Source: Malacoraja senta (lineage: Eukaryota). From it: a stretch of 64,000 nucleotides of DNA. Below are positions 6,856 to 60,359 of this stretch, in pieces. Made by a program: the position numbers and the translations under genes. The stretch lies in the NCBI GenBank assembly GCA_038087875.1, contig CM075978.1, positions 179,986,001-180,050,000 on the forward strand, given 5' to 3'. Below the pieces are notes generated by a model, which saw nothing but the letters and a program-made list of their open reading frames with translations, was not told the DNA's origin and did not search any database. Numbering within the stretch: position 1 is the stretch's first letter; every line of letters starts with the position of its first letter.

Positions 6856-6951
6856 AGTTATTCTTCAGTTTGCAGAATCCGACAATGACAGTCATAATGA
6901 ACAAAAATGCGATTACAACCGCCGAACGGACAGAACTCCAGATGACTGTTT
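6856..6951 (-). CDS. Gene A exon 4, transmembrane ETVIWSSVRSAVVIAFLFIMTVIVGFCKLKNN
   Basis: 96 nt, acceptor aacttgcag, donor CT|GTAAGT, phase 1 in and out; hydrophobic stretch with Arg, then basic stop-transfer residues. Confidence 0.85.
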
Positions 6952-9900
6952 CTGCAAGTTTAGAATGGCAGATACTGAATTCTACTTTGAGCCGACCATT
7001 GTTTGTTTTAAAGAATCTCTTTAGAATTTGGTGATTTGCTATCGCTCATAATTACATGCAAAAAACATTCTGCTTGAATCTGATATTAGAAACAACGTTG
7101 TCCCGAAGAGTGAGAATGAATAAATTGCCATCTGTACCGGATGCCGTAAATTACTTTAAGCGAGTTTAATTTCAGACGAATAAGTAGGGGGGAGGAGGAT
7201 GGGGGTGGAGTGGATATATTTCTTCACTTTTAATTGGAATGCAGCAGCACACAAAGCTCCAACGTCTTAGGGAAGTGCTGATTTGGTTGAGGTCCAAGGC
7301 AAATCTTCTTTCCCTTATGTACAGTATCAAGGTGTACTTTTTCCAGACACGCCTGCAGATCTTAAAGATAATGAGCTACGGTCATTATCATATGGTAAAT
7401 ACGCTATAGTAAGTCCCAGGGCGCCCTGTCCTCTAAAAAACGTTCAGTGATTGGCAATAAATCGCTCCCCATCATCGCCCCCCACATGCAGTTATTATAT
7501 TGAGTGAAACAGCACGGAAACCGGCCCTTGGCCCAGCACGTCTATGCCGATCAAAATACCTCACAATACCAGAATAGGAGTAATTGCTGAAACCCACCAT
7601 ACGGCGCTTGACCAGAAACAAGATATGAAACAGTTCCCTGCTTTAAATCCAAACAGGTTGGAAGGGACGACATTTTTTCTACACAGGATCACAAATCGGG
7701 ATGAATCCACAATGATAGGAATATGAATTCAATAAAGAGCTGCAAGTGGTTGTGTGTGGAGCAAAAATTAAAACCGCCCCCTCTAATTCGTTACCACAAT
7801 TTGAAAACAACAAATTTTGCGCGAATTTTCTGGAGAACTGAGTCGATACTATTTACGAGGATAGTATTATTTGCATTCCAATTTACATGATTTATCATCC
7901 ACAAACACAGAATTGAATCGTAGGTTGCAAAACGTCATAGTGTTTTTAAGTCATACCTTTGAAAACGACGTGGAATTTGCGACTTTGGTGGGAGATATGA
8001 GACACCAGATAAACGTAAATGTTTCCATTCGGCTCCGACTGTGTCACGGGCAATGAAGTAGAAACTGCGTACAGCCCTTCAGTATTTTTCTGTTTAACGT
8101 TATTAGTCTCAGTTCTAACTGCGGTACCATGTTTATGCCATACAAGAGTTCACTCGGGTGAAACTCGGCCGTTTCACAGACGTGAAGGGATAAAGGGAAT
8201 AAAGGCAGTAGTTGTGTGGGAAATAACTGCAGATGCTGGTTTAAACCGAAGATAGACACAAAATGCTGGAGTAACTCAGAGGGACAGGCAACATCTCTGG
8301 ATAGAAGGAATGGATGACATTTCGGGCTGTGACCCTTCTTCAGACAGAGAGAAAGAAGTAGCTTCCGAGCCTATTGCCCCCTGGCTTGTGAGGGGAACTT
8401 TCTGACAATTAGCTGAATTCTAGAACTTTTTTAAAAGAGTCTCCAAAATGAAAGGGATGCACCAATTTTGGGCAGTTCCTAGACATCTGTCAGCAAATTC
8501 AGTAGCAGACACTAAACAATGGATGTAGTATGAGGCTACGGGAGAATGCGTAGTAACGAGCAGACAATGCAAAATATTTCGAGCGAAAATGAATGCCATC
8601 CCTTCACATTTCGACAGTTACCTGAAATAGCGGGTCATTCTGGGACCCGTTAGAGACAGTGTTTACGATGATAGGAATGGCATTTGTCATCCTTTTAAAA
8701 CAAACGTTGTCAATATCAACACACTCAGATGTCAATAATAAGTTATAAAATTATACGGTGTTTCAAGTCATACCTTGGTCAGGTTTGCGAAGGGCGTGCG
8801 TGGCAATGGCGGGTCTTTGGAGGGAGATGTGCATCACCAGACAAATGTAAATATTCCCGTTGGCCTCCGACTGCGTCATGGGTATTGAACTGGAAGCCGT
8901 GTACAGCCCTTCACTATTTTTCTGTTTAATGGTATCAGCCTTAGCTGTAACAGCAACGCTATTTTTATACCATATAACGGTTAGATCACCCGGGTGAAAC
9001 TCGGCCGTTTTACAGACAAGCGTTGTAGCTGCAGATGAATTGCTCTCGGATATCCAGTTAAACTTCAGTGGAGTTGGAAGGGCTGTGGGGCAGAGTGCGA
9101 AAATATCATATTACTGGGATGAAATTAAGCAAAGACAGTAGGAGCATCTGGTTTAGAAATCCACATATTTTACCCGATCCCTTCAAGACAGAAGTTAACG
9201 AATTATTGATATCTGTTACCTCATACAGCGGAGCGCAATAACCGCAGCGGAAAGTTAATTTTGTTTCAACTCAACAAGCGTTCAATGACATGAAATGTGG
9301 AATCTTTTGGAGGTACAATTTATATTGATTTATGCTGGATCGTATTTGAAGGTGTGATGATCTCTTGATTGAAAGCTATTGTTACCTGTTTTGAAAGACA
9401 TCTTATTTGCTATATTTTTAAAATATATTTTCGGCATAATAATATCCATTGAACGTCGTAAATTCAATAAAACGAGCATAAAATTATATGGTTAGCAGTT
9501 TTCACATAATTTCATTGGGCCTTTCTCTCTCTCTCACAAATCGGAACTCTAATATAGAAATATAAATCTTGTGCAATATTATCGGCTATTCTGCTCACTT
9601 TTGTCACTCACCACATACTGTTAGTTCTGACCCTCTTCCTTCTCCCCTAATTTCCCCCTGACGCATGACTACACAGCGATAGTTTCCCGAATCCTGGTAG
9701 GTCGTGTTCAGCAAATCAAAATATCCGCCTGCTCTATTTTTGAAGGTGAATCGCTTTCTGCCATCAGCGTCGCTTTGTATATATTCATTCTCCCCCTGTT
9801 TTCGCCAACGCACTTCGATTCCCGAACTGTCATACGTAAGTGGGATTATGCAGTGAAAGGTGACGTTTGCTCCCTTCAATATAACCTTTCGTTCTGGAAT

Positions 9901-10164
9901 TTGGGTAACGTGGATCGCAGTTTCTTCAGCAGCTGTTGGAAAAACGTTTAAGATTTGGTTAATTATATTCAATGTAGTACCAACTCTTTAGATAATACAT
10001 TGGCATGAAAAACAAAACTAACAAAGACAAATAGAACAAATAGTTTTCACCAGTTAAGCCAGGAATAGTTTGGGATATTTTGGCATTTAGATAAGTCTAT
10101 ACGAGATCGTTCAAGTACCTGTGCAAATAATCACGGAGAGAGACAGAACCAGGACCAGAAACAT
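6856..10164 (-). CDS. Gene A: VJ-C1-TM Ig-superfamily receptor, activating type (TM Arg). Join 10164-10119, 9932-9612, 9082-8774, 6951-6856; cytoplasmic exons unresolved
   Basis: Four exons with GT-AG boundaries, all phase 1, splice into an open frame: signal peptide, V domain, C1 domain and hydrophobic TM containing Arg. Confidence 0.9.
7957..8185 (-). pseudogene. Relic C1-set exon in gene A intron 3
   Basis: Translates to VCETAEFHPSEL / VWHKHG...KQKNTEGLYAVSTSLPVTQSEPNGNIYVYLVSHIS with a frameshift, second Cys changed to Tyr and 5' part missing; keeps donor AG|GTATGA. Confidence 0.85.
8215..8345 (-). mobile_element. Penelope-type tail fragment
   Basis: aaatgctggagtaactcag...cccttcttcagac. 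Confidence 0.6.
8774..9082 (-). CDS. Gene A exon 3, Ig C1-set domain
   Basis: 309 nt, acceptor cccacag, donor AG|GTATGA; [32 protein letters not shown] match C1-set motifs. Confidence 0.93.
9612..9932 (-). CDS. Gene A exon 2, Ig V-set domain with joined J-like strand
   Basis: 321 nt, acceptor ttccaacag, donor TG|GTGAGT; B-strand Cys (TFHC), Trp (VRWRK), [17 protein letters not shown]. Confidence 0.95.
10119..10164 (-). CDS. Gene A exon 1, signal peptide MFLVLVLSLSVIICT
   Basis: ATG at 10164, 46 nt, donor AG|GTACTT, phase 1; hydrophobic leader; 3 differences from the gene B leader. Confidence 0.9.
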
Positions 10165-47727: not shown

Positions 47728-48872
47728 TCCATGTCAATACTCTACCACCAATACCATGTGCTCTAATTTTGCACACTAAACTCTTGTGTGAGTCCTTGTC
47801 TTTTTGAAAGTCCAGATACACCACATCCACTCGCTCTCCCTTATCCATTCTACTTGTCATATCCTCGACAAAATCCAAAAGATTAGTCAAACATTATATC
47901 CCCTTCATAAATCCATGCTGACTTTGATCGATCCTGTCACTGCTTTCCAAATGTGCTGCTGTTACACCTTTAATAATCGACTCAAGCATCTTCCCCACTA
48001 CCTGGCATATAATTCCCCATTTTCTCTCTCTCTCCTTTCTTAAAACGTGGAGTTATGTTAGCTACCCTCCAGTCCACGGGAACGGATCCAGAGTCTATCG
48101 AACACTGGAAAATGATCACCAATGCATCCATGATTTTTAGGGCCACCTCCTTGAGTATGGGATGCAGACCATCTGGCCCTGGGAGAATAAAGAGGGAAGA
48201 TTAGACTTTATTGCCTTCCATCACAGTGAGGAATGTAGGGAATCCCCTGTGGTGGATGTATATGTTGACTTTTATGTAGTTGTGTGTCTTGTTCCTTTTT
48301 CTAGTATGGCTGTATGGTAAACCGAGTTTCACTGTACATTAATTGGTACTCGTGACCATAAAATACATTTGAAACCTTTGAAACCTTTTATCTGCCTTTA
48401 GTCCCAACAGTTTACATCACACCATTTCCTCACTAATGTGGATTCCCTTCAGTTCCTCCCTCCCGCTAGATCCTCAGTCTCCCAGTATATCTCCAGTATT
48501 TAAGAAACTTGATCAAGGCATCCTTGGGCTCACAGATATTCTCGCATTCCATGACTATCCACGCAATTAAAATCTAAAATTATGCAAATAAAACCACTAA
48601 ATGCGATTCTTCCCGATAGCTGTCGAAAGCTGAAGTAGACTCTACTCGGTGTTAAATTTGACATCTAGATGAGCAGTGGACAATATCGGTGTCAACAGCA
48701 ACAAAATCTGAATCTTGATCGCAGCACCGATTCTTCCTCTGCTTTAATGGCCCTGATGCATTCGGCTATGACGTTCTTTTACCTTTTAGTTCTACTATTC
48801 GGACTTGTCATTTCCATCTGTTGTTGTACTTGGATATAGTTGTGATGATGGCAATATATTGTATAACCCCAT

Positions 48873-49014
48873 CTTCTTCTTCTTCTTTCGTGTGGCGTGC
48901 ACAGCCTAAAGTTGTTGGACAACTTGTTCTATTTGATCTTCCGTTTGTGCACGTCGAGTTGATTGCATTAGTCGAAACAGGGCAGACCACGTGAAGGTTG
49001 CAATCTTCCACCCC
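48873..49014 (-). mobile_element. 142-bp SINE-like insertion with (GAA)n tail
   Basis: Absent from the gene A arm; flanked by gtataaccccat / gtataatcccat (11 of 12 match). Confidence 0.8.
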
Positions 49015-49310
49015 GTATAATCCCATGCTAGATCAATTACAATGGCGTCCAGCAACACAGGGGTCCCTTAATTAAATTATTGCACGTTTTGGAATTATCG
49101 GCGCACATTGTCCCATACTCTGTCGGTAATCGCGCCCTGATCTCTGGCATTTAGGAATTCCCCAACTCTGATAATTCGCTAGTTTAATTGCGATCTAAGA
49201 TCCAAATTCTACAATTATTTTCAAAAACCTTCTCGCTTCGCTTTCGCCCTGCAGAAAACACCTCCCAAACATTATTTTGTTAGTTACCGGATGCACTCTT
49301 ATTTATGTTC

Positions 49311-49370
49311 TTTCACCAGCGAATGCGAAGTGTCGTCCCACCCACGTAAGAAAACGCGCCAAACGTCATC
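49311..49370 (+). promoter_or_regulatory. Putative proximal promoter motifs of gene B
   Basis: ccagcgaatgcgaagtg...cacgtaag...aaacgtca is conserved in all three leader-upstream regions. Confidence 0.35.
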
Positions 49371-49457
49371 GCACCACATTTCAAAGTAACCATTGCTTAA
49401 AGTGAATATCGTAGTGAGGCATCAGTTGAATGATTTTCTCCGAATGTTAAAACTGCA

Positions 49458-49503
49458 ATGTTTCTGGTCCCGATTCTGTCTCTCTCCATGATTATTTGCA
49501 CAG
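49458..49503 (+). CDS. Gene B exon 1, signal peptide [15 protein letters not shown]
   Basis: ATG at 49458, donor AG|GTACTT, phase 1. Confidence 0.9.
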
Positions 49504-52500
49504 GTACTTGAACGATCTCATATAGACTTATCTAAATGCCGAAATATCCAAAACTATTCCTGGCTTAACTGATGAAATCTATTTGTTCTATTTGTCTGTT
49601 AGTTTTGTTTTTCATGCCAATGTATTATCAAAAGAGTTGGTTCTACGTTGAATATAATTAACCAAATCTTAAACGTTTTTCCAACAGCTGCTGAAGAAAC
49701 TGCGATCCACGTTACCCAAATTCCAGAACGAAAGGTTATATTGAAGGGAGCAAACGTCACCTTTCACTGCATAATCCCACTTACGTATGACATTTCGGGA
49801 ATCGAAGTGCGTTGGCGAAAACAGGGGGAGAATGAATATATACAAAGCGACGCTGGTGGCAGAAAGCGATTCAGCGTCAAAAATAGAGCAGGCGGATATT
49901 TTGATTTGCTGAACACGACCTACCAGGATTCGGGAAACTATCGCTGTATAGTAATGCGTCAGGGGGAAATTAGGGGAGAAGGAAGAGGGTCAGAACTAAC
50001 AGTATGTGGTGAGTGACAAAAGTGAGCAGAATACCTGAGAATATTGCACAAGATTTATATTTCTATATTAGAGTTCCGATTTCTGAGAGAGAAGGGCCCA
50101 ATGAAATTATGTGAAAACCCATACAATTTGATGCTCGTTTTAGTGAATGTACAACGTTCAATATTATTATGCCGAAAATATATGTTAAAAATACAGCAAA
50201 TAAGATGTATTTCAAAACAGGTAACAATAGCTTTCAATCAAGAGATCGTCACACCTTCAAATACGATCCAGCATAAATCACTATAAATTGCACCTCCAAA
50301 AGATTCCACGTTTCATGTCATTGAACACTGGTTGAGTTGAAACAGAATTAACTTTCCGCGGCGGTTCTTGCGCTCCGCTGTATGATGTGACAGATATCAA
50401 TAATTCGTTAACTTCTGTCTTGAAGGGACCGGGTAAAATAGGTGGATTTCTAAACAAGCTGGGACTGGCAGAGGTTTGCTTCCTTCTCCTACTGTCTTTG
50501 TTTAATTTCATCCCAGTAATATGATATTTTCGTACTCTGCCCCACAGCCCTTCCAACTCCACTGAAGCTTAACTGGATATCCGAGAGCAATTCATCTGCA
50601 GCTACAACGCTTGTCTGTAAAACGGCTGAGTTTCACCCGGGTGATCTAACCGTTATATGGTATAAAAATAGCGTTGCTGTTACAACTAAGGCTGATACCA
50701 TTAAACAGAAAAATAGTGAAGGGCTGTACACGGCTTCCAGTTCAATACCCATGACGCAGTCGGAGGCCAACGGGAATATTTACATTTGTCTGGTGATGCA
50801 CATCTCCCTCCAAAGACCCGCCATTGCCACGCACGCCCTTCGCAAACCTGACCAAGGTATGACTTGAAACACCGTATAATTTTAAACTTATTATTGAATG
50901 CGTTTCTTGATGTTGACAAAGTCNNNNNNNNNNNNNNNNNNNNNNNNNNNNNNNNNNNNNNNNNNNNNNNNNNNNNNNNNNNNNNNNNNNNNNNNNNNNN
51001 NNNNNNNNNNNNNNNNNNNNNNNNNNNNNNNNNNNNNNNNNNNNNNNNNNNNNNNNNNNNNNNNNTCTATTCTAACGGGTCCCAGAAAAACTCATTATTT
51101 CTGGTAACTCTGGAAGTATGAATATGAGATGGAAGGGATGGTATTTATTTTCCCTCTAAACATTTTGCGTCGTTTGCTCATTCTCCCGAGGCTTCATACT
51201 AAATTTATTGTTTAGTTTACATTGCCGGATTTCGTGACAGATGTCGAGGAACGTTACGTCGTTTCTTTGTTCTGGAGCCTACCCCTAAAATAGTGCATCT
51301 CTTTCATTTCGGAGATTCCAGAATTGAGTTGTCAGGATGTTTCCTTTCCAAGCCATGGGCAATGGGCTCGGAAGCTCCCTCCTTTATTTTACACGGCCTC
51401 ATCCTTTTCACTAATATCGTACTAAATTATGGATTCACAGAAATAATGGCAATGTATATTTATATAACTGGAAGGTACACAAAAATGCTGGAGAAACTCA
51501 GCGGGTGCAGCAGCATCTATGGAGCGAAGGAAATAGGCGACGTTTCGGGCCGAAACCCTTCTTCAGACTGATAGGGGGTGGGGAACAAAAAGGAAAAAAG
51601 GAAAAAGGCGGAGGAGGAGCCCGAGGGCTGGGGGAGGGGAGGAGACAACCAGAGGGCTGATGAAGGGGAGGGGACAGCAAGGGCTAGCAGAATTGGGAGA
51701 ATTCAATGTTCAAGCCCCCAGGATGTAGACTGCCCAAGCGGAATATGAGGTGCATTTCCTCCAATTTACGGTGTTGCTCGCTGTGGCCATGGAGGAGACC
51801 CAGGACAGAGAGGTCAGATACGGAATGGGAGGGGGAGTTGAAGTGCTGAGCCACCGGGAGGTCAGGTTGGTTATCCCCGGATGCTCGAGAAAATGTGTTT
51901 TCCGCCTTCAATAATCGTTGCAATCTCTGTGTGAATGGACAACATATGTGGAACTGTGGCTATGATGGTGGAGTGCGAAATGTGCCTACTTTCATTACCC
52001 TCGCTGATGAAAGTAGCCGGTTTGGTAGTTACTGTCGAACTAATCTTGGCGAGCCCTCTATTTTTATCTGCTTCACACGCACTATCGCGATGCAGGATCT
52101 AATAAACAATAACATAAGCATGGTCTGAAGAAGGGTCGAAACGAAATGAAAGGGTCGAAACGAAGGGTTGACCCGAAACGTCGCCCATTCCTTCTTTCCA
52201 GAGATGCTGCCTGTCCCACTGAGTTACTCCAGCATTTTGTGTCTAACTTCGATTAAAACCAGCATCTGCAGTTCTTTCCTACACAATAAAATGAGCATGA
52301 TGTACTGATCCTTGCTACTGCAGATCAGCGAAGGATATTAAATATAGTGTTTTACTCAATTCAAGCGAATTGTTGGTCAGAGTATGGGGCGCCATAGTTT
52401 ATTCTATTGCCAAGCCAAGTCAAGTAAAAGAAACATTACTCCCTTCCAGCAATACGTATTCACCTGTCTTTAAATAATGCTCAGTACACCGGAGACTGAT

Positions 52501-55500
52501 ACGGTGCAAATTATTCACGGCACGCAAATTACTCAGGTCGCATGTTACATTTTGCCAGAAAAAATAATTACGGATGTCAGAATAAAAAATACTTTAAAAA
52601 TTAAATGCAAATGTGATTATCTTTTTACAGTTATCTCGCGCTATTCCGTGTAGTTATCGTAAGCTTATAAATCAGTTCAGTCACAAGTAATTCAAATAAC
52701 TATTCTTTTAACGTATCAAAAGTACCCAAAGTGGAATTCATTATTTTTCCTCATCTTTCAGAACTCGATAACAAATATTTCTATATCTGGGCTTCTGGAA
52801 GCGCGGTCGGTGGAATCGGCATTTTGGTGTTTGTATTTATCATTGTCCTGAGGTGCCGTTCGACAAATAAAAGCAAGTATTATGCTCACCGATGTGTTTT
52901 CTGAGAACCTAGACAACACCGCAGATAATGAATACAATTTCTAAATGATAGAGCTGCTATGCAATTTTGCAGGAATTCGAATTGCACCGGACATGACCGG
53001 TAATTCAGTATTTATAATTTAATAGTGATCACAGAAGAAATAAATATAAATATTATTCTGCTTATTTGCAAGAGTATGTTTCAATTTTACATATGGAAAA
53101 GCGAAATCTAGATACATTTCAGGTGCAACTGGTTTGAGCAGGATGGTATTAGTGCCCAGTCGAGAGGAAATAGCGGATGCTTGGCGGGCTCACATTTTTA
53201 ACTTAAATATGATATGTCAAAATAATTTCCAACCACAAATGCAAACTTTATGCTGTTCATTAAGGAATTGTAGAGAACTATCCTCATTTGCTACACATGA
53301 AAATCCAATTCTCACCATGATCTCTTATTGATAAACTTTCTAACATTGTTTCAAAACTTCCCATTTGGTTGAATCTGCAAGAGTCCTCCAATTACCCACC
53401 TCCCCCCGCCACAGTTCATTCAAAACTTTTCTCGATACGATAAGGAACGACACATTATAGACAAGGGCAATCGCAATCGCAATCGAAGTCAAAGGGGATA
53501 GTATTTAGACGCAGCAGTGTGAAGCGTTGTGAACACCTTTTTTCGAAAAGATATTTGAAGTAAAATCTCATGTGACGGATGCAGTATAGATCTCAATGTA
53601 ATCGTTGGATTATGACATGCTGAATAACACGTTAATGTTGCTTAGATATATAATCTTGTAGTTTTATCTGATTTAAAATAAATAATGTAGTAATCGCACA
53701 AAAATATCGTTGAATATTAAGAAACGTGGAAACTAGAGGGAGACAGAAAGGCCTGGATAGAGGGGATGTGTAGAGGATGTATCCACTTGTGGGAGAGTCT
53801 AGGACCAGAGACCATAGCCTCGGACTAAAATGACGTACATTTAGAAAGAAAGGGAGGAGGAATTTCTGCAGTCAGGATGGTGAATCCGTGGAAGTCATTG
53901 CCACAGAAGACTATGAAGGCCAAGTGAATGGATATGTTTAATGGCGGAGAGTGATAGATTCTTGATTAGTACGGGTGTCAAAGGTTATGGGGAGAAAGCA
54001 GGAGAATGGGGTTGAGAGGGAAAGACAGGTTAGCCATAATTGAATGGCGGAGTAGACTTGATCGGGCGAATGGCTTAATTCTGCTCTTATAATGTATTAA
54101 TATATGAACAGTAAACGCTGCATTTGCGTGTGACAGTTGCATTCTGCATTTGAAGTAAGATAACGTTTCTCACTTAAATAACGCCTGTCTTAAATAACTC
54201 AATTATTCACGAGTTTATATTAAATTAATCATATCATACTAGAAACATAATATTGTGTTTCCTCTCTCCGTGAAATTCATTGTCCTCGTTAAAGAAAGAA
54301 CGGTTCTTATAATTGCACCAACCCTCAAAGTCTTGCATCGTTTAACGATGTTCTCGGATATGAATTTAACCCGAATTTCAATGAATGAAATCATCCTTTG
54401 ATATTGCTTGATGCTTTGGATGGGCAATTTCATTGAAGAGTCCGCGAAGCTCCAAAAATGCTCTTCGTCACTTTTACAATTCACAATGTTCATGCATATA
54501 CATAATCGAATATATGTGTGACTGTGTGCATTGCCCGTCATTTTTGCTGAATGGATAGCACATTGGCTCCATGGAAGGAAGCAGAGGGTGATAGTGGAAG
54601 GTTTCTTCTCAGAATGGAGGCCAGTGACTAGTGGTGTGCCACAGGGTTCGGTGCTGGGCCCGTTATTGTTTGTCATCTACATCAATGATTTTGGAGAACA
54701 TACAGGGCCAGATTAGCAAGTTTGCTGATGATACAAAAGTTAGCGGTTTTGCAGCAGGATCTGGATCGATTGGAATTTATTCTTGATGGAATTTAATACA
54801 GAGAAGTGTGAGGTGTTACATTTTGGGACGTCGAACAAGGGCATGACATACACGGTAAATGGTAGGCCTCTGGCTAGTGTTGTAGAGCAGAGGGATCTAG
54901 GAGTACAAGTGCATGGTTCCTTGAAGGTCGAGTCACAAGTAGATAAGGTGGTCAAAAAGGCTTTTGCCACTGGCCTTCATCAGTCAGAGTATTGAGTATA
55001 GAAGTTGGGAGGTCATGTTGCAGTTGTATAAGAAGTTGGTGAGACCGCATTTAGAATATTGTATTCAGTTCTTGGCACCATATTATAGAAAAGATATTGT
55101 CAAGCTTGAAAGGGTTCAGAAAAGATTTACGAGGATGTTGCCAGGACTAAAGGGTGTGAGCTATAGGGAGAGGTTAAGCAGTCTGGGTCTCTATTCCATG
55201 GAGCGTAGGAGGATGAGGGGAGATAGAGGTATATAAAATCATGAGAGGAATAGATCGGGTAGATGCACATTCTTTTACCCAGAGTAGGGGAATCGAGCAT
55301 CCGAGGACGTAGGTTCAAGGTGAAGGGGAAAAGATTTAATAGGAATCCCAGGGGTAACTTTTTCACACAGAGGGTGGTGGGTGTATGGAACAAGCTGCCA
55401 GAGGAGGTCATTGAGGCGGGGACTATCCCATCGTTTAAGAAACAGTTGGACAGGTAACTGGATAGGATAGGTTTGGAGGGTTATGGATCAAGCGCAGACA

Positions 55501-57368
55501 AGTGGTAGCTGGAACATTATTGGCCAGTGTGGACGAGTTGGGCCGAAGGGCCTGTTTCCACAGTGTATCACTCTATGACTGTATGACTATTTAATCTCAT
55601 TGCTCATCGCTTTCCCTGCATACAATGATAGTCTCTTGTTTTACTGTTACCATAAAAAAAGTATTAATAGGACACGGGAAAATGTTTTACCGTTATTTAT
55701 AATTTAATTTCATTAACTTTTAGAGCCAAGAAGTACCGGGGGCCATGAAGAATCGGTATGCATTTATGTATATATACATATATATTACATTTGAGAAAAC
55801 GGTTGAAGCATCTATAAATAAAGTTGTAAAACAAGTATTCTGTCAGAACTATTTCGCAAAAGTATCAATCGCTATCGCGGATCTGTTAAATTGGGTTTAA
55901 CATTAATTTGACGGCAGTTGCGACGTTTGTGTAAGTGGTTATAGGAAGAGACAAATTAAATTGATTAATTAATTCCGCATATACGTAAATAATAACTACA
56001 TTCATCGATCCAAGTTACGTTTGAACTCAGTAATTCCACCTAGTGATGCTGAATGACAGTGAAACCCATCAAGTTTAAGTTCAGTAGATAAATTCTACTT
56101 AAAACCCATACAGGTCTTCTAGTTTTAGATTTATAAACTATATCTTTTGTATGTGTTTGGAATTTACTCCATTGCGCTTACTGGCAAATGCGCAAACAAC
56201 GATAATGGCACGTGCAGTCATGTAAATTATTTTCTTTCTGATCCATGCAGGTTGAAGCGAACAACACCCTGACTTATTCTGCTGTAGATATGAGCAATTC
56301 CAAAAGGAAATTGAGACAGAAAAGCGAAGAGGAGACAGCCTATGCACGAGTAAGATTTTGCAGCACATAAAGAAAACATAGAACGCGGCGCAGAAAATAG
56401 GTGTAAAAGAGCCATATCCTAATATCATAAATCATGAGACATAGAGCCCATCGAGTCTGCTCTGTCATTGGATCATGGCTGATTTATTTTTCCCACTCAA
56501 CCTCATTCTGCTGCCATATCTCCGTAATCTTTGACAACCTTACTAATCAAGAATATTGTTAAATCTTTGCTTAGAAAATATCCAATAAATTGTCCGCCAC
56601 TTCCGTCAATGAATCTTCTATCCAAGAATCAAGAGTCAATAATGTTTTATTGTCATATGTCCCACCCAGGCTAGTACCTTGCCTCTAACACCATGAACTC
56701 CTATCTTGTTCAGCAGCTTCATGTGGGTCCTGAAAATCCAAGTAAACGTGGTCCATGGTCTCTCCTTTGTCCATCTCCCCTTAAAACTATGCTGACTTCG
56801 GCCTGTTTGACAATATTTTAAGTACCCCGAAACCTCATCATTCGTAATGTACACTAATATCAGACCAACCACTGAATGTCTGGGATTATAGGCACAAGTG
56901 ACTGCAGATGCTGGAATCCTGTCCAAAAAACCCGAAGCTTTTTGCATCCGAGGAAGGAAAAATCAGGTGCCATTTTAATCCAAAGAAGGGTCGAGATCCA
57001 TCACATAGTTTCTTATTTTTCTTCCACAGATGTTGCCAGGCCTACAGTGTTCGTTCCTCCGGCACGTTGTCTATTTACTCAATATCTGCGTTTGTCCCAA
57101 CGTTGGTAGTGTGGCGCGTCTAAAGTTGTTCCGATGTTTTTGATATCTGACTTGATCCGCAGGCCACAAAGTGGTTCAACAATGACATATTTTGCAACCG
57201 TTGGTTTTTCAGGTAAAACAAGGGGCCGCCCGGGAAGTACTTACATACGCATCTGTGGAATTGTCTCAACCCGGGAATGCTGGTAAAGTTAAAGCCAGGG
57301 ATAAGATCACGGAATATGCAGCGCTGCAGACGGCAAATCCACGAAGAGTAAAAGAAGACGGAAAGTAA
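49458..57368 (+). CDS. Gene B: VJ-C1-TM Ig-superfamily receptor, inhibitory type (SIRPalpha-like tail), 366 aa. Join 49458-49503, 49688-50008, 50548-50856, 52762-52872, 52973-52999, 55724-55755, 56251-56349, 57213-57368
   Basis: Exon lengths 46+321+309+111+27+32+99+156 = 1101 nt give one open frame ending in TAA; all acceptors AG, donors GT except one GC. Confidence 0.85.
49688..50008 (+). CDS. Gene B exon 2, Ig V-set domain with joined J-like strand
   Basis: Same motifs as gene A; 6 nt differences in 321. Confidence 0.95.
50548..50856 (+). CDS. Gene B exon 3, Ig C1-set domain
   Basis: [10 protein letters not shown]...[20 protein letters not shown]...[10 protein letters not shown]...PDQ; 3 nt differences from gene A in 309. 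Confidence 0.93.
50924..51064. other. Assembly gap (141 N) in gene B intron 3
   Basis: Run of N. Confidence 1.
51470..51880 (-). mobile_element. Penelope-like fragment
   Basis: [17 protein letters not shown]...[24 protein letters not shown]. Confidence 0.8.
52762..52872 (+). CDS. Gene B exon 4, uncharged transmembrane [37 protein letters not shown]
   Basis: Acceptor tcatctttcag; GC donor AA|GCAAGTATTATGCT aligns with the gene A donor CT|GTAAGTATTATGCT. Confidence 0.85.
52973..52999 (+). CDS. Gene B exon 5 (27 nt, RIRIAPDMT)
   Basis: Acceptor ttttgcag, donor CG|GTAATT, phase 1 to 1. Confidence 0.7.
53720..54090 (+). mobile_element. CR1 3' fragment in a gene B intron
   Basis: gagtctaggaccagag...ggttatggggagaaagcagg...gaatggc 3' UTR. 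Confidence 0.75.
54530..55590 (+). mobile_element. CR1 3' fragment in a gene B intron (sense)
   Basis: [24 protein letters not shown], (ctatgact) tail. Confidence 0.88.
55724..55755 (+). CDS. Gene B exon 6 (32 nt, [11 protein letters not shown])
   Basis: Acceptor taacttttag, donor CG|GTATGC; supplies the phase 1-to-0 change needed to read the ITIM exons. Confidence 0.7.
56251..56349 (+). CDS. Gene B exon 7, ITIM plus ITSM: [33 protein letters not shown]
   Basis: Acceptor ttctttctgatccatgcag, donor GA|GTAAGA, 99 nt, phase 0 to 0. Confidence 0.85.
57213..57368 (+). CDS. Gene B terminal exon, ITIM plus ITSM-like: [51 protein letters not shown]
   Basis: Acceptor ggtttttcag, phase 0, stop TAA at 57366-57368. 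Confidence 0.85.
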   Translation, partial: VKQGAAREVLTYASVELSQPGNAGKVKARDKITEYAALQTANPRRVKEDGK

Positions 57369-60359
57369 TCAAGGAAATTCTACGATGGCCTGGTAATACT
57401 TTACGGTCCACGATGTAAAGGGTCTTCATTATATACACGTTCACATCCACCTATGTTATAGAAATACCGAAATTGGACATATTACGCAACAATCATATTG
57501 ATCTTTAATTATTCAGATTATCTGTCTGCAATTGATGAATTCTAAAAAATATTCACAATAACTCAGTTATTTAAAACTATTAAAAATATACTAACAGCAT
57601 GCATTAATTGTACGTCATGCTATTTTCCTATATGTTTGTTTATCCGATCTCATAGTTTATACAGAAATATTAAGATATCTTCGGGAACTGAAAGACAATT
57701 AAAAAAAAAAAAAAATCCCTTCAAATCCAGTATATCCCGGCTTCTTTTCTAGCCGATACTTTTGGAGTATTCGTTACAACATTTCCGCTCTTTGGATCTT
57801 TCATGGAATTTCTGAATTCTACTTTAAATGATGGTAGAATGTCATATTTGCACGCAATGTTGGTTGGCTGCCCAATCTTTTCCGGGCCGCATATTCAAAT
57901 TACTTCCGAAGCCCCAAAACTCTGGGATAATCAATTTGCAAAACGGTACTTAGAATCTTCTAAGACTAACAATATTCCGGAGTGCTGCATGCGATTTTAT
58001 TTGTGTGAAAATATAAGCACTATCCGCTTTATATAAACATATGTACATATATATGTAAAGCCCATAGGAAAGAGCGAATAAAATACCACCGCCTGTTACA
58101 TCTGAAGCGGCTAATCGCTTGTCTTTGAACTTGAAATTGCGGAAGGCGACGCAAATCAGCATCTCTTTTTTGTAACTGTCATGGTAGAGTTCTTGTGTAC
58201 GTCACCAAACAGGAGGATCGATACGTTCGTATGTGTTTTACATGCCAGAAGCATTACCACATTAAAATGGCATCATTATTTTTCTCCCTAAATAATTACA
58301 TCTTCCTACAAAGTCTCCAAAGTCATCAGTTTTCCATCTTTTAACGCAAATGCTTAAAATATGAACCAGTTATTTGACTCAAATTCTGAAAATGAAAAGA
58401 ACTTAAAAATTCACACAATCCAACTATTTTGTAGAGCATTTTGCATCACCATTCTATAATTTGTGAGTATGTTAGCTTTGCTCGTATATGTTAATTTTCA
58501 TGGCTCAATGGCCATAATTCAACAATTGTTTATAAACATGTTACGTTTTTGCAAGTTCACATCAAATTTCCGCAACTATTGTATTGAATGACCCTTTTCC
58601 AAATCGCTACATAACCTCAGCCCGCAATTTCTTAAGGTCGTCGCCTATTGTCAACCCACACCTTCGCACCTTTTTCACCTATCTTAATGTAAATTGGAAC
58701 TTTCATGATAGCGTTGGGACGGCAATCGAGATAAACTCAAAGAAAGTCAAAAAGTCAAGATCCATATTCTCCATTCTTTCCCTTCTTACCGAGGCTCGGA
58801 GAATATTGCATATTTTCTACGCAAAAGGTATCACCGCCGATTTGCATCTTCATTTGATCTTCAAAAATAACGTTTTATTTCACATTCCTCTGCCATCTGC
58901 ATCTGCTGCTATCTCTCCGTTCAGGTGTCCCCGCCAATATCTATCTTCGGGATTTCACATGACCTATTTTAGGTTGTCCGATCTCAGTTTCAAATTGTTG
59001 CCATCGTTAAATTTCGAGGTTAATCCCAAAACAATTTATATATTCAGCAAATGAAAGCACTGCCACTAAATGGTCCAGGAAACACCCGCCATGAAATATT
59101 TGGATTCCAAACTGCTTCCCTTCTCTCTGATATTTTTATTTGCACCGTTCTACCCACTCTTGTTATTTGTGAACATATCATTTAACGTTACCTTTGAGCT
59201 GCCTTGGTAAACGCCATTCAGAAATCAGTTATAAACACCTTTATGGTCATCTTTTGAATATTCCTTCAGTCATTTTTTCAGGTATTTTCTAAGTTAAACA
59301 GAACACACTTTGCTGAGCCAACGTTAATGCTCATTGGTCTCGGCAAGCAGTTGGAGTAAAAAATCGAAATAAACAAGATGCAGCAATACGTAATTAAATG
59401 AGTTTAACCTCGTTACATATGATTTTCTATTAACAAAATATATTTCATTCTTTGTAATCAGTTCTGACATTCATGGGCCGTAACCGAAAGGTTAACCAGT
59501 GGAAAAACATGGTTTTGTTAGCTTATTCGCAATATTAACACGCTTCTAAATATAATCGACAATGACGCATTAGTTTCCTGCGCCAGATATAAGCGGTTAA
59601 TGAAGTAGGTACGGTTCTGCAGTTCTTTGCAAATTTAGCAGTTACCTGTCTGAAAATATGTCGTTTGGTGCATAACGGAAGTGCATAGAGCTCATGGATC
59701 AACACGTAACTGTCGCCTCAAAAGTAGATTCTAATCGCTATTTTCCATTGCAATGTTTCCGAAGAAGAGTTTCTATTTTCCCCATCTCCCATATTACATT
59801 GCGTAGGCGTCTTGCTGAAAGAACAATAATAAAGTGATGCTGTATACGTGAATGCATCCACAAATAGCTAGATATCTGTATAATGCTTATTTGGCTGTAT
59901 TCAACCGCAAACTTGTATTTACGAAGTAGTGTGATTACACCTTTCACAGCTACCTAGTGACTTGATATTTACCCCCATCAAACCTACTCCGTGATCTTTA
60001 GCTTAATTTACCACGTGCTTTTTCACCATAAGCCAAAGGACACGATTTGGCAATAAGTTGAAACAGTATTTTTTCTCTTTGGAAAACACGTTCTTAGTGA
60101 ATCAATGCATTGCCGGGGCTCTGCGAACAAGGCAAAAAAACACAATGGAATATGAAGAATAGCACCCTTAGATTTATTAGTGGAAGCAAGCCCATCTCCA
60201 AGTTAAAGGTACAACTATGGGCACTCACACGTGCCCCAGCTGTGCCCGCCTTTTTGTCACTTACGTCAAACAGTTCTTTTTCCAGGTGTGCACTGGCACA
60301 CTCCCCTGTGCAGAACTAATTGATTTCAGATGTGTCGATATTTACTGTTGAATAAAGGT

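What the first reader, a model, noticed from the sequence alone, without database searches (positions are those of the whole stretch)
56251..57368. Four-tyrosine ITIM/ITSM tail built from two similar exons
Seen: exon 7 has LTYSAV...TAYAR and exon 8 has LTYASV...TEYAAL. The Val that completes TAYARV is the first codon of exon 8. Established: alternating ITIM/ITSM-like pairs recruit SHP-1/SHP-2, as in SIRPalpha (ITYADL, TEYASI, LTYADL, SEYASV) and PD-1. Inference: the tail arose by duplication of one ITIM-ITSM exon, which would suggest either deep SIRP homology or convergence.
Basis: partly seen in the sequence, partly recalled or inferred. Interest (0 to 1): 0.72.

Follow-up and report, generated by a model that had tools for sequence, protein, structure and literature searches.

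The report
SIRP-like inhibitory tail of ray receptor
These are the last two exons of a cartilaginous-fish immune "brake" receptor; each carries one pair of inhibitory tyrosine motifs, and the whole tail resembles that of mammalian SIRP-alpha, so this is an ordinary further member of a gene family that this scan has already met several times.

Summary
Exon 56251-56349 encodes LTYSAV...TAYAR. Exon 57213-57368 starts with Val, which completes TAYARV, and then encodes LTYASV...TEYAAL and a stop.

They are coding exons 6 and 7 of a 357-aa receptor: leader, germline-joined VJ-type V domain, one C1 domain, TM, then a tail with exactly four tyrosines. The same exon plan and tail occur in sawfish, a shark and a chimaera. 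Public gene sets label the family inconsistently, most often "SIRP-alpha-like".

Each tyrosine pair is its own phase-0 exon, and family members carry one to three or more such units. The exon-duplication idea is therefore supported, but the event is ancient and shared by the whole family.

Homology with the SIRP-alpha tail is likely (about 60%) but unproven. All four tyrosines align colinearly (z 9; hhalign 91%, E 1e-6), and the phase-0 boundary before the first tyrosine sits at the same position. In the mammalian SIRPA gene examined (a deer), however, all four tyrosines lie in one exon.

One caveat: in this copy the TM exon's splice donor is GC, not GT. No RNA data could be found, so in-frame joining of the tail is inferred.

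The scan has already reported this family at several other places in this genome.

The parts
49458..49503 (+). Leader exon ([15 protein letters not shown], ends in phase 1)
   Evidence: ATG followed by a hydrophobic leader and a gt donor; the assembled reading frame is open. The leader exon has the same position and phase in Callorhinchus and Heptranchias genes.
49688..50008 (+). V exon with germline-joined J-like motif (GRGSELTV), phase 1-1
   Evidence: Pfam Ig_3 (above its cut-off) and V-set (just below its cut-off). phmmer gives E 4e-29 to the sawfish gene and 1e-10 or better to 38 cluster representatives, those whose source names were checked being cartilaginous-fish proteins. Splice sites.
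50548..50856 (+). Single C1-set Ig exon, phase 1-1
   Evidence: Pfam C1-set E 9.8e-14. PDB hits are Ig constant domains and UrIg2. Splice sites.
52762..52872 (+). Transmembrane exon (uncharged TM), ends in phase 1
   Evidence: Aligns with the TM exons of Pristis and of the window's minus-strand paralogue.
52873..52878 (+). Splice donor GCAAGT (GC-AG intron) where relatives have GTAAGT
   Evidence: Alignment. Contigs of two DNA samples are identical to the window here. Use of the GT 4 nt downstream would give a stop in the next exon.
55724..55755 (+). 32-nt cytoplasmic mini-exon ([11 protein letters not shown]), phase 1 to 0
   Evidence: Aligns with the 35-nt exon of the sawfish gene, differing by an in-frame 3-nt deletion. 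The GHE(E/D) motif is shared with the sawfish exon, and Callorhinchus has DHPEEE at that place.
56251..56349 (+). Tail unit A exon: ITIM LTYSAV plus TAYAR(V), phase 0-0, tyrosines 22 residues apart
   Evidence: Orthologous exons in Pristis, Callorhinchus and Heptranchias are 99-102 nt and phase 0-0.
57213..57368 (+). Terminal tail unit B exon: Val completing the ITSM, ITIM LTYASV, ITSM-like TEYAAL (23 residues apart), stop codon
   Evidence: 78% nucleotide identity to the sawfish exon, dN/dS 0.23.
6856..10164 (-). Inverted paralogue: leader 10164-10119, V 9932-9612, C1 9082-8774, frameshifted second C1 about 8181-7949, TM exon 6951-6856 with Arg in the membrane span; no tail-unit exons found
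   Evidence: blastn shows 91% identity over the leader, V and C1 region. Exon mapping and the TM sequence TVIWSSVRSAVV... are. tblastn with the tail exons finds no second copy in the window.

Best explanation
The two exons are the last two coding exons of an intact-looking gene for an inhibitory cell-surface receptor. The gene belongs to the cartilaginous-fish 'SIRP-like' VJ-C1 family: leader, non-rearranging V domain with a built-in J motif, one C1 domain, uncharged TM, and a tail of about 95 aa.

The tail is modular. A 32-nt mini-exon is followed by unit exons in phase 0. Each unit encodes one ITIM-type tyrosine and, 22-23 residues later, one TxYxx(V/L) tyrosine. The +3 residue of the second motif of unit A comes from the first codon of the next exon.

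The two units are paralogous. They derive from an exon duplication that predates the split of rays, sharks and chimaeras, and some relatives have duplicated units again.

Inferred mechanism, not shown here: when the V domain engages its ligand, Src-family kinases phosphorylate the four tyrosines. Each bis-phosphorylated pair then docks the tandem SH2 domains of SHP-1/SHP-2, which damp signalling. This opposes the neighbouring inverted paralogue, which has a 91% identical ectodomain region, an arginine in its TM and no such tail, and so looks like an adaptor-coupled activating partner.

The tail unit and the receptor are probably (about 60%) homologous to SIRP-alpha rather than convergent.
For: Gene model: open 357-aa frame, AG acceptors throughout and GT donors at all introns but one.

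Same seven-exon plan and phases in Pristis, Callorhinchus and Heptranchias.

Tail exons are more conserved than the introns, dN/dS 0.39 against the sawfish gene, with all four motifs kept.

Unit similarity: z 5.0 in the window; z 12.3 (units 1 and 2) and 13.3 (units 2 and 3) in Callorhinchus, where units 2 and 3 also have nearly identical intron ends. Unit number varies in the family.

SIRP link: four tyrosines colinear, SW 67, z 9.1. hhalign of family tails against SIRP-alpha tails: 91%, E 1.1e-6. Same phase-0 exon start 8 codons before the first tyrosine, and TM exon ending in phase 1. BLASTP E 1e-11. The top named Atlas clusters are SIRP-alpha, 0.97. NCBI automatic names are SIRP-alpha-like or SIRP-beta-1-like for many members.

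Partner gene with a TM arginine.
Against: There is no RNA evidence. The only runs holding the locus are DNA, with even depth over the introns.

The TM exon donor is GC in this copy. A GT 4 nt downstream would truncate the protein before the tail.

TEYAAL is not a strict ITSM.

In the mammalian SIRPA gene examined, all four tyrosines are in one exon and two mini-exons precede it.

The units show no A-to-1 or B-to-2 orthology with the SIRP-alpha halves.

The V domain's best PDB matches are Ig light-chain, NAR and TCR domains; SIRP-alpha is not among the 60 listed.

This gene has one C1 domain, not two.

SHP binding, ligand and expression are untested.
Confidence: 0.8

Rival explanations
1. The resemblance to SIRP-alpha is convergent. 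The family is an independent cartilaginous-fish V-C1 lineage whose tail was shaped by the same constraint: two tyrosines 22-26 residues apart, to fit the tandem SH2 domains of SHP-1/2.
For: Each unit resembles either SIRP-alpha half equally (z 3-7), so there is no orthology signal. SIRP-alpha's two halves are themselves an internal repeat (z 7.6), so duplication could have happened separately in each lineage. Duplication of units is recurrent in the fish family. No intron separates the pairs in the mammalian SIRPA gene examined. Other unrelated-looking multi-V receptors also carry VTYADL...VVYAEV tails. The V domain is not SIRP-specific in the PDB search. Automatic names are inconsistent: tapasin-related, CD276, NCR3LG1-like.
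Against: Colinear alignment of all four motifs including non-motif residues (NN.xTY, N.TEYA..Q), with z 9.1 against 0-4.4 for other ITIM tails. hhalign 91%. Identical position and phase of the exon boundary before the first tyrosine, and of the TM exon end. A VJ plus C1 ectodomain is a rare combination shared with SIRPs. SIRP-alpha is the top Atlas match.
Confidence: 0.35
2. In this particular copy the tail is not made. The T-to-C change in the TM exon donor diverts splicing to the GT 4 nt downstream or causes intron retention, giving a short-tailed receptor (...KSKAKKYRGP*). The tail exons would then be recent relics.
For: GCAAGT replaces the GTAAGT seen in Pristis and in the window's own paralogue. 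The base before the donor is A, not the usual G. An alternative GT lies 4 nt downstream and leads to a stop in the mini-exon. The change is present in the contigs of two DNA samples.
Against: GC-AG introns are a normal minority class, and this site has the full AAGT consensus at +3 to +6. The mini-exon keeps its frame through an in-frame 3-nt deletion and keeps the GHE motif. Both tail exons are open, with all four motifs intact.
Confidence: 0.15
3. The motifs are chance open frames in intronic or intergenic DNA and not exons at all.
For: No transcript evidence for this species.
Against: Exact AG/GT boundaries in compatible phases. Homologous exons sit in NCBI gene models of three other species. 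The exons are more conserved than the flanking introns. Four motifs against about 0.19 expected by chance.
Confidence: 0.01

Closest known systems
SIRP-alpha (SHPS-1 / PTPNS1 / CD172a) and its paired relatives such as SIRP-beta
   Same: V domain with a J-like motif followed by a C1-set domain. Uncharged TM, with the TM exon ending in phase 1. Four cytoplasmic tyrosines in two ITIM-type pairs, colinear with this tail and similarly spaced (22/14/23 here, 24/17/26 in SIRP-alpha). The exon carrying the first tyrosine starts in phase 0, 8 codons before it. Both tails are 84 aa from that boundary to the stop. Both have paired relatives with a basic residue in the TM.
   Different: One C1 domain instead of two. 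The tyrosine pairs lie on two exons here but on one exon in the mammalian SIRPA gene examined. One mini-exon precedes the tail here, two in SIRPA. The V domain is very divergent. Ligand (CD47?) unknown. The second motif in most family members is TVYAQT, not a strict ITSM.
Cartilaginous-fish 'SIRP-alpha-like / SIRP-beta-1-like / tapasin-related-like' V-C1 gene models (e.g. Pristis pectinata XP_051884095.1, Callorhinchus milii XP_007902824.2, Heptranchias perlo model P0157)
   Same: Same exon plan, phases, domain order and tail units. The sawfish locus is colinear with the window through the introns.
   Different: This copy has a GC donor after the TM exon. Only the two ray genes examined (this one and the sawfish gene) have Val at +3 of the second motif (TAYARV/TPYAQV); most other members read have Thr there. 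Unit number differs between members.
PD-1 and PECAM-1 (ITIM plus ITSM tails that recruit SHP-2)
   Same: One ITIM followed about 23-25 residues later by TxYxx(V/I), the geometry used by the tandem SH2 domains (established knowledge).
   Different: Single pair only. Unrelated ectodomains: PD-1 has a lone V domain, PECAM-1 has six non-C1 Ig domains. No sequence relation was tested here.
UrIg / UrIg2, non-rearranging VJ-C1 genes of sharks (PMC12227049)
   Same: Germline-joined VJ exon followed by C1 domains in cartilaginous fish. UrIg2 was among the best PDB hits for the C1 exon.
   Different: UrIg2 has nine C1-type domains, and the paper's main text contains none of the words ITIM, ITSM, SIRP or tyrosine. 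Rejected as the identity of this gene.

Membership tests
SIRP family | N-terminal V-set domain with a J-like G-x-G-x-x-L-x-V strand encoded in one exon | tested here: met
   GRGSELTV at the end of exon 49688-50008. Pfam Ig_3 above its cut-off, V-set just below its cut-off.
SIRP family | Two membrane-proximal C1-set domains | tested here: not met
   One C1 exon. No second C1 in the + gene by blastn or ORF reading. Only the minus paralogue has a second, frameshifted C1. A 142-N run lies in intron 3 and was left unfilled; the paralogue has no exon in the matching interval.
SIRP family | Cytoplasmic tail with four tyrosines in two ITIM-type pairs, alignable to SIRP-alpha | tested here: met
   SW 67, z 9.1, all four colinear. 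hhalign 91%, E 1.1e-6.
SIRP family | Tail gene structure: TM exon ending in phase 1; tyrosine-bearing exon starting in phase 0, 8 codons before the first tyrosine | tested here: met
   Window; Muntiacus SIRPA.
SIRP family | All four tyrosines in a single terminal exon (as in mammalian SIRPA) | tested here: not met
   Two exons here and in Pristis and Heptranchias, three in the Callorhinchus gene; one exon in Muntiacus SIRPA. Non-mammalian SIRPA could not be fetched.
SIRP family | SIRPs are the nearest named relatives of the whole protein | tested here: inconclusive
   For: Atlas top named clusters are SIRP-alpha at 0.97; BLASTP E 1e-11; many NCBI names. Against: other members are named tapasin-related, CD276 or NCR3LG1-like, and SIRP-alpha is not among the 60 listed PDB hits of the V exon. 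No phylogeny was made.
SIRP family | Binds CD47; tail recruits SHP-1/SHP-2 when phosphorylated | not testable with these tools
   Needs protein biochemistry.
SIRP family | Conserved synteny with the SIRP gene cluster | not tested
   The window holds only the two receptor genes and retroelement remains. The neighbours noted by the scan are more genes of the same family.
Cartilaginous-fish SIRP-like VJ-C1 receptor family (unnamed in the literature searched) | Seven-exon plan: leader, V, C1, TM, mini-exon, unit exon(s), with introns in phases 1,1,1,1,0,0 | tested here: met
   Window, Pristis, Callorhinchus, Heptranchias.
Cartilaginous-fish SIRP-like VJ-C1 receptor family (unnamed in the literature searched) | Significant sequence similarity of the V domain and tail to family members | tested here: met
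   phmmer E 4e-29 (Pristis) and 3e-34 (Heterodontus). Tail 65-70% identical to the Pristis tail.
ITIM/ITSM inhibitory receptors (functional class) | (S/I/V/L)xYxx(I/V/L) and TxYxx(V/I) motifs in the cytoplasmic tail of a type I membrane protein | tested here: met
   LTYSAV, TAYARV and LTYASV are strict matches; TEYAAL is relaxed (Leu at +3).
Paired activating/inhibitory receptors | Neighbouring gene with a near-identical ectodomain, a charged TM residue and no inhibitory tail | tested here: met
   91% identity over leader, V and C1. TM reads TVIWSSVRSAVV.... No tail exons in the 6.8 kb downstream. Adaptor pairing is not testable.
UrIg/UrIg2 | VJ domain followed by multiple C1 domains (nine in UrIg2); no ITIM tail described | tested here: not met
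   One C1 and an ITIM tail here; the paper's description is.

The most novel reading that the evidence does not exclude
The phase-0 'ITIM plus ITSM' exon is the ancestral building block of the SIRP-alpha tail. Under this reading the cartilaginous-fish family and SIRPs descend from one VJ-C1 inhibitory receptor of the first jawed vertebrates. The fish keep the original one-unit-per-exon layout, and mammals have fused the units into one exon. That would date the SIRP lineage, a proposed relative of the antigen-receptor precursor, and its SHP-docking tail to before the split of cartilaginous and bony fishes.
Probability: 0.5. Interest if true: 0.55.

Novelty: new member of a known kind. Interest (0 to 1): 0.35.

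Why it matters
SIRP-alpha is one of the few non-rearranging receptors with a V-J-type domain and C1 domains, and it has been argued to sit close to the ancestor of antibodies and T-cell receptors (PMC2785349). A whole family with the same outer architecture and a colinear four-tyrosine tail in sharks, rays and chimaeras would push that lineage, and its inhibitory signalling module, back to the earliest jawed vertebrates.

The one-unit-per-exon layout also shows a simple route by which inhibitory strength can be tuned: duplicating a symmetrical phase-0 exon.

For this scan the practical point is that this is another copy of a family already reported several times. It adds three things: the unit-exon comparison, the comparison with the SIRPA gene structure, and the GC splice donor.

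Tried and rejected
RNA evidence. Two run searches found only DNA-like runs. Laying four runs showed even depth across the introns and no exon-exon joints, so splicing could not be tested.

UrIg2 lead. It came from the PDB hit and was rejected after reading the paper: nine C domains and no ITIM tail.

Literature. Searches for SIRP in cartilaginous fish or elasmobranchs and for PRARP found no description of this family in the held library. Sano et al. 1999 on the mouse SHPS-1 gene structure could not be opened.

Non-mammalian SIRPA. The tail-restricted protein search listed only mammals among its best 120.

First SIRPA locus. The look-up with P0247 failed because the isoform is not on record; P0268 worked.

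Unit-to-unit orthology (A with SIRP half 1, B with half 2) gave no signal.

A second C1 exon or further tail units in the + gene: none found.

Structure prediction was not run, because the question concerns a disordered tail.
Full report
OBSERVATION. Exon 56251-56349 is 99 nt, preceded by ag and followed by gtaaga, with phase 0 at both ends. It reads [33 protein letters not shown]. Exon 57213-57368 is preceded by ag and starts with GTA (Val). It reads [51 protein letters not shown] and then a stop. Spliced together they give LTYSAV (ITIM), TAYAR|V (strict ITSM, completed across the junction), LTYASV (ITIM) and TEYAAL (ITSM-like). These are the only four tyrosines in the tail. A loose motif [ILVST]xYxx[ILV] occurs at 0.0022 per codon in the window's six frames, about 0.19 expected in 84 residues, and no open frame in the window has more than two.

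GENE MODEL. The exons end a seven-coding-exon gene on the + strand:
- leader, 49458-49503
- V exon, 49688-50008, ending in the J-like GRGSELTV
- C1 exon, 50548-50856 (Pfam C1-set E 9.8e-14)
- TM exon, 52762-52872
- a 32-nt mini-exon, 55724-55755
- the two tail exons

Intron phases are 1,1,1,1,0,0 and the product is 357 aa. I found no second C1 exon in this gene. A run of 142 N in intron 3 was left alone; the paralogue has no exon in the matching interval.

SPLICING EVIDENCE AND A CAVEAT. No RNA data could be brought to bear. The only runs holding the locus have even depth across introns and exons and show no exon-exon joints, so they are DNA.

The junctions therefore rest on comparison. A Pristis pectinata gene model (XP_051884095.1) lies at a locus colinear with the window through its introns (about 70% identity). 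It has the same exons with the same boundaries and reads ...EEETPYAQ|VKQGAVRE.... The tail exons are 78-84% identical to it against about 67-70% for the introns, and dN/dS is 0.39 over both exons (small sample, exon A alone is uninformative).

The caveat is the donor of the TM exon. Pristis and the window's own paralogue have GTAAGT; this gene has GCAAGT. Contigs from two DNA samples are identical to the window there, so it is unlikely to be an assembly slip, although one sample may be the assembly's own. With the GC donor (phase 1) the tail is in frame. With the GT four bases downstream the protein stops in the mini-exon (...KSKAKKYRGP*). GC-AG introns with AAGT at +3 to +6 are a normal minority class. 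The mini-exon keeps its frame (an in-frame 3-nt deletion relative to Pristis) and keeps its GHE motif. I therefore think the tail is made, with about 15% probability that it is not.

THE FAMILY. A full-library phmmer search with the V exon found 146 proteins. The best are V-C1-TM proteins of Pristis, Heterodontus, Callorhinchus, Mustelus, Hypanus, Heptranchias, Mobula, Chiloscyllium and others. NCBI's automatic names are inconsistent: SIRP-alpha-like (tyrosine-protein phosphatase non-receptor type substrate 1-like), SIRP-beta-1-like, tapasin-related-like, CD276 homolog, NCR3LG1-like. Many members have tails made of the same units; many others have short tails. Paper searches found no description of the family. 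UrIg2, suggested by a PDB hit, is a different gene: nine C domains and no ITIM tail.

EXON DUPLICATION. In the window the two exons are more alike than composition-preserving shuffles (Smith-Waterman z 5.0, p about 0.0014). The family makes the case much stronger.
- In a Callorhinchus gene with six tail tyrosines, each pair sits on its own exon. The two internal units are phase 0-0 exons of 102 and 117 nt, and the third is the terminal exon.
- Units 2 and 3 of that gene have nearly identical intron ends.
- Its units score z 12.3 (1 with 2) and 13.3 (2 with 3) against each other.
- Heptranchias (a shark) has the same leader, V, C1, TM, mini-exon, unit A, unit B plan.
- Other members have one to three or more units, some nearly identical repeats.

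The A/B duplication, however, is older than the split of rays, sharks and chimaeras, and the symmetrical phase-0 exon has been duplicated repeatedly since. A family detail: the +3 residue of unit A's second motif is always supplied by the next exon. It is Thr in most members read (TVYAQ|T) and Val in the two ray genes examined, this one and the sawfish gene (TAYAR|V, TPYAQ|V). Only those two therefore have a strict ITSM there.

COMPARISON WITH SIRP-ALPHA. I fetched mammalian SIRP-alpha proteins and one SIRPA locus, from Muntiacus reevesi.

Points in favour of homology:
- The SIRPA TM exon ends in phase 1, as here.
- The exon carrying the tyrosines starts in phase 0 at IQDNNDITY, exactly where the window exon starts (VEANNTLTY), with the tyrosine at the ninth codon in both.
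- From that boundary to the stop both tails are 84 aa. They align end to end with all four tyrosines matched (score 67, z 9.1), whereas seven other ITIM-bearing tails give z 0-4.4. Those controls have two or three motifs each, so the comparison is generous to the four-motif tails.
- A profile-profile comparison of ten family tails with eleven SIRP-alpha tails gives 91% probability, E 1.1e-6, over 71 columns.
- BLASTP of a full-length Callorhinchus member against SIRP-alpha gives E 1e-11 in two registers. One aligns V-J-C1 with SIRP d1-d2; the other runs from C1 through the TM to the tail.
- The top named ESM-Atlas clusters for that protein are SIRP-alpha (0.97).

Points against homology:
- The mammalian SIRPA gene examined has all four tyrosines in one exon and two mini-exons (25 and 52 nt) instead of one.
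- Each fish unit resembles either SIRP half equally. SIRP's halves are themselves a repeat (z 7.6), so the two-unit state could have arisen separately.
- The V domain's best PDB matches are Ig light-chain, NAR and TCR domains, and SIRP-alpha is not among the 60 listed.
- There is one C1 domain, not two.

I put common descent of the tail unit and the receptor at about 60%, and convergence under the SHP tandem-SH2 constraint at about 35%. I do not file the gene as a SIRP: two defining features were tested and not met.

HOW IT MOST LIKELY WORKS. What is shown: a type I membrane protein with a V-J domain, a C1 domain, an uncharged TM and two tyrosine pairs 22 and 23 residues apart. This matches the 24 and 26 residues measured in SIRP-alpha and, from established knowledge, about 25 in PD-1 and 23 in PECAM-1.

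What is inferred: after ligand binding, Src-family kinases phosphorylate the tyrosines. Each doubly phosphorylated pair binds the two SH2 domains of SHP-1 or SHP-2, and the phosphatase damps nearby activating signals.

CONTEXT. The context fits a paired system. An inverted paralogue lies 38 kb away on the minus strand: leader 10164-10119, V 9932-9612, C1 9082-8774, TM exon 6951-6856. It is 91% identical over the leader, V and C1 region, diverges from the TM exon on, has an arginine in its membrane span (TVIWSSVRSAVV...), and has no tail-unit exons in the 6.8 kb downstream. Whether it couples to a DAP12-like adaptor cannot be told from DNA.

NOVELTY AND EARLIER FINDINGS. After forming this reading I looked up the scan's notes. 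Other members of the same family in this genome have already been followed up at several places, with the same conclusion: SIRP-like VJ-C1 receptors, inhibitory and activating members, serial tail exons, no paper found. The window lies inside a large cluster of them.

This finding is therefore a further member.
- the unit-per-exon structure in three lineages
- the statistics for the exon duplication
- the direct comparison with a SIRPA gene structure
- the GC donor in this copy

The 38 kb between the two genes holds only retroelement remains: reverse-transcriptase, integrase and endonuclease fragments.

Noticed in passing
window 52873-52878 (+): The TM exon's splice donor is GCAAGT, where the sawfish orthologue and the window's own paralogue have GTAAGT. 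A GT 4 nt downstream would shift the frame and stop the protein before the inhibitory tail.
   Followed up: partly
window 6856-6951 (-): The TM exon of the inverted paralogue encodes an arginine within the membrane span (TVIWSSVRSAVVIAFLF...), as in adaptor-coupled activating receptors. No ITIM exons were found downstream of it.
   Followed up: partly
window 7949-8181 (-): The minus-strand paralogue has a second C1-type exon, 77% identical in DNA to the first C1 of the + gene. Its reading frame is broken by a frameshift between ...FHPSEL and TLVWHK, so it may be a pseudo-exon or an assembly indel. The + gene has no counterpart.
   Followed up: partly
window 48525-50922 (+) versus 10971-8704 (-): The inverted duplication of upstream region, leader, V and C1 is 87-91% identical. 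Identity then drops to about 70% or nothing beyond the C1 exon. This is the pattern expected of paired receptors with a homogenised or recently copied ectodomain.
   Followed up: partly
The matching interval in the paralogue is about 50 bp and holds no exon.
   Followed up: no
window 11000-48500, and 53600-55700 inside intron 4: Retroelement remains: ORFs with reverse transcriptase, integrase and endonuclease domains between the two receptor genes. A very high-copy repeat sits inside the intron before the mini-exon, with depth thousands of times that of the unique flanks in the DNA runs. These are described only.
   Followed up: partly
window 56347-56355 (+): If the intron after unit A were retained, its first codon (GTA of the donor gtaaga) would also read Val. 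TAYARV would therefore be complete with or without splicing, although the frame runs to a stop 6 codons later.
   Followed up: no
L002 (Callorhinchus) 8730-8765 and 9560-9593: Two consecutive tail-unit exons of one chimaera gene share nearly identical upstream intron ends (...ttcgcttcacag / ...ttggcttcacag). This is a footprint of tandem duplication of an exon together with its flank.
   Followed up: yes
runs X3-X23: DNA runs of at least seven other coded organisms hold 9-15% of the sampled words of 56200-57700. One relative (X3) has contigs about 93-94% identical across the TM exon (52626-53054) and unit B (56645-57496), so close relatives carry the same locus. Whether they share the GC donor was not visible in the output.
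   Followed up: no
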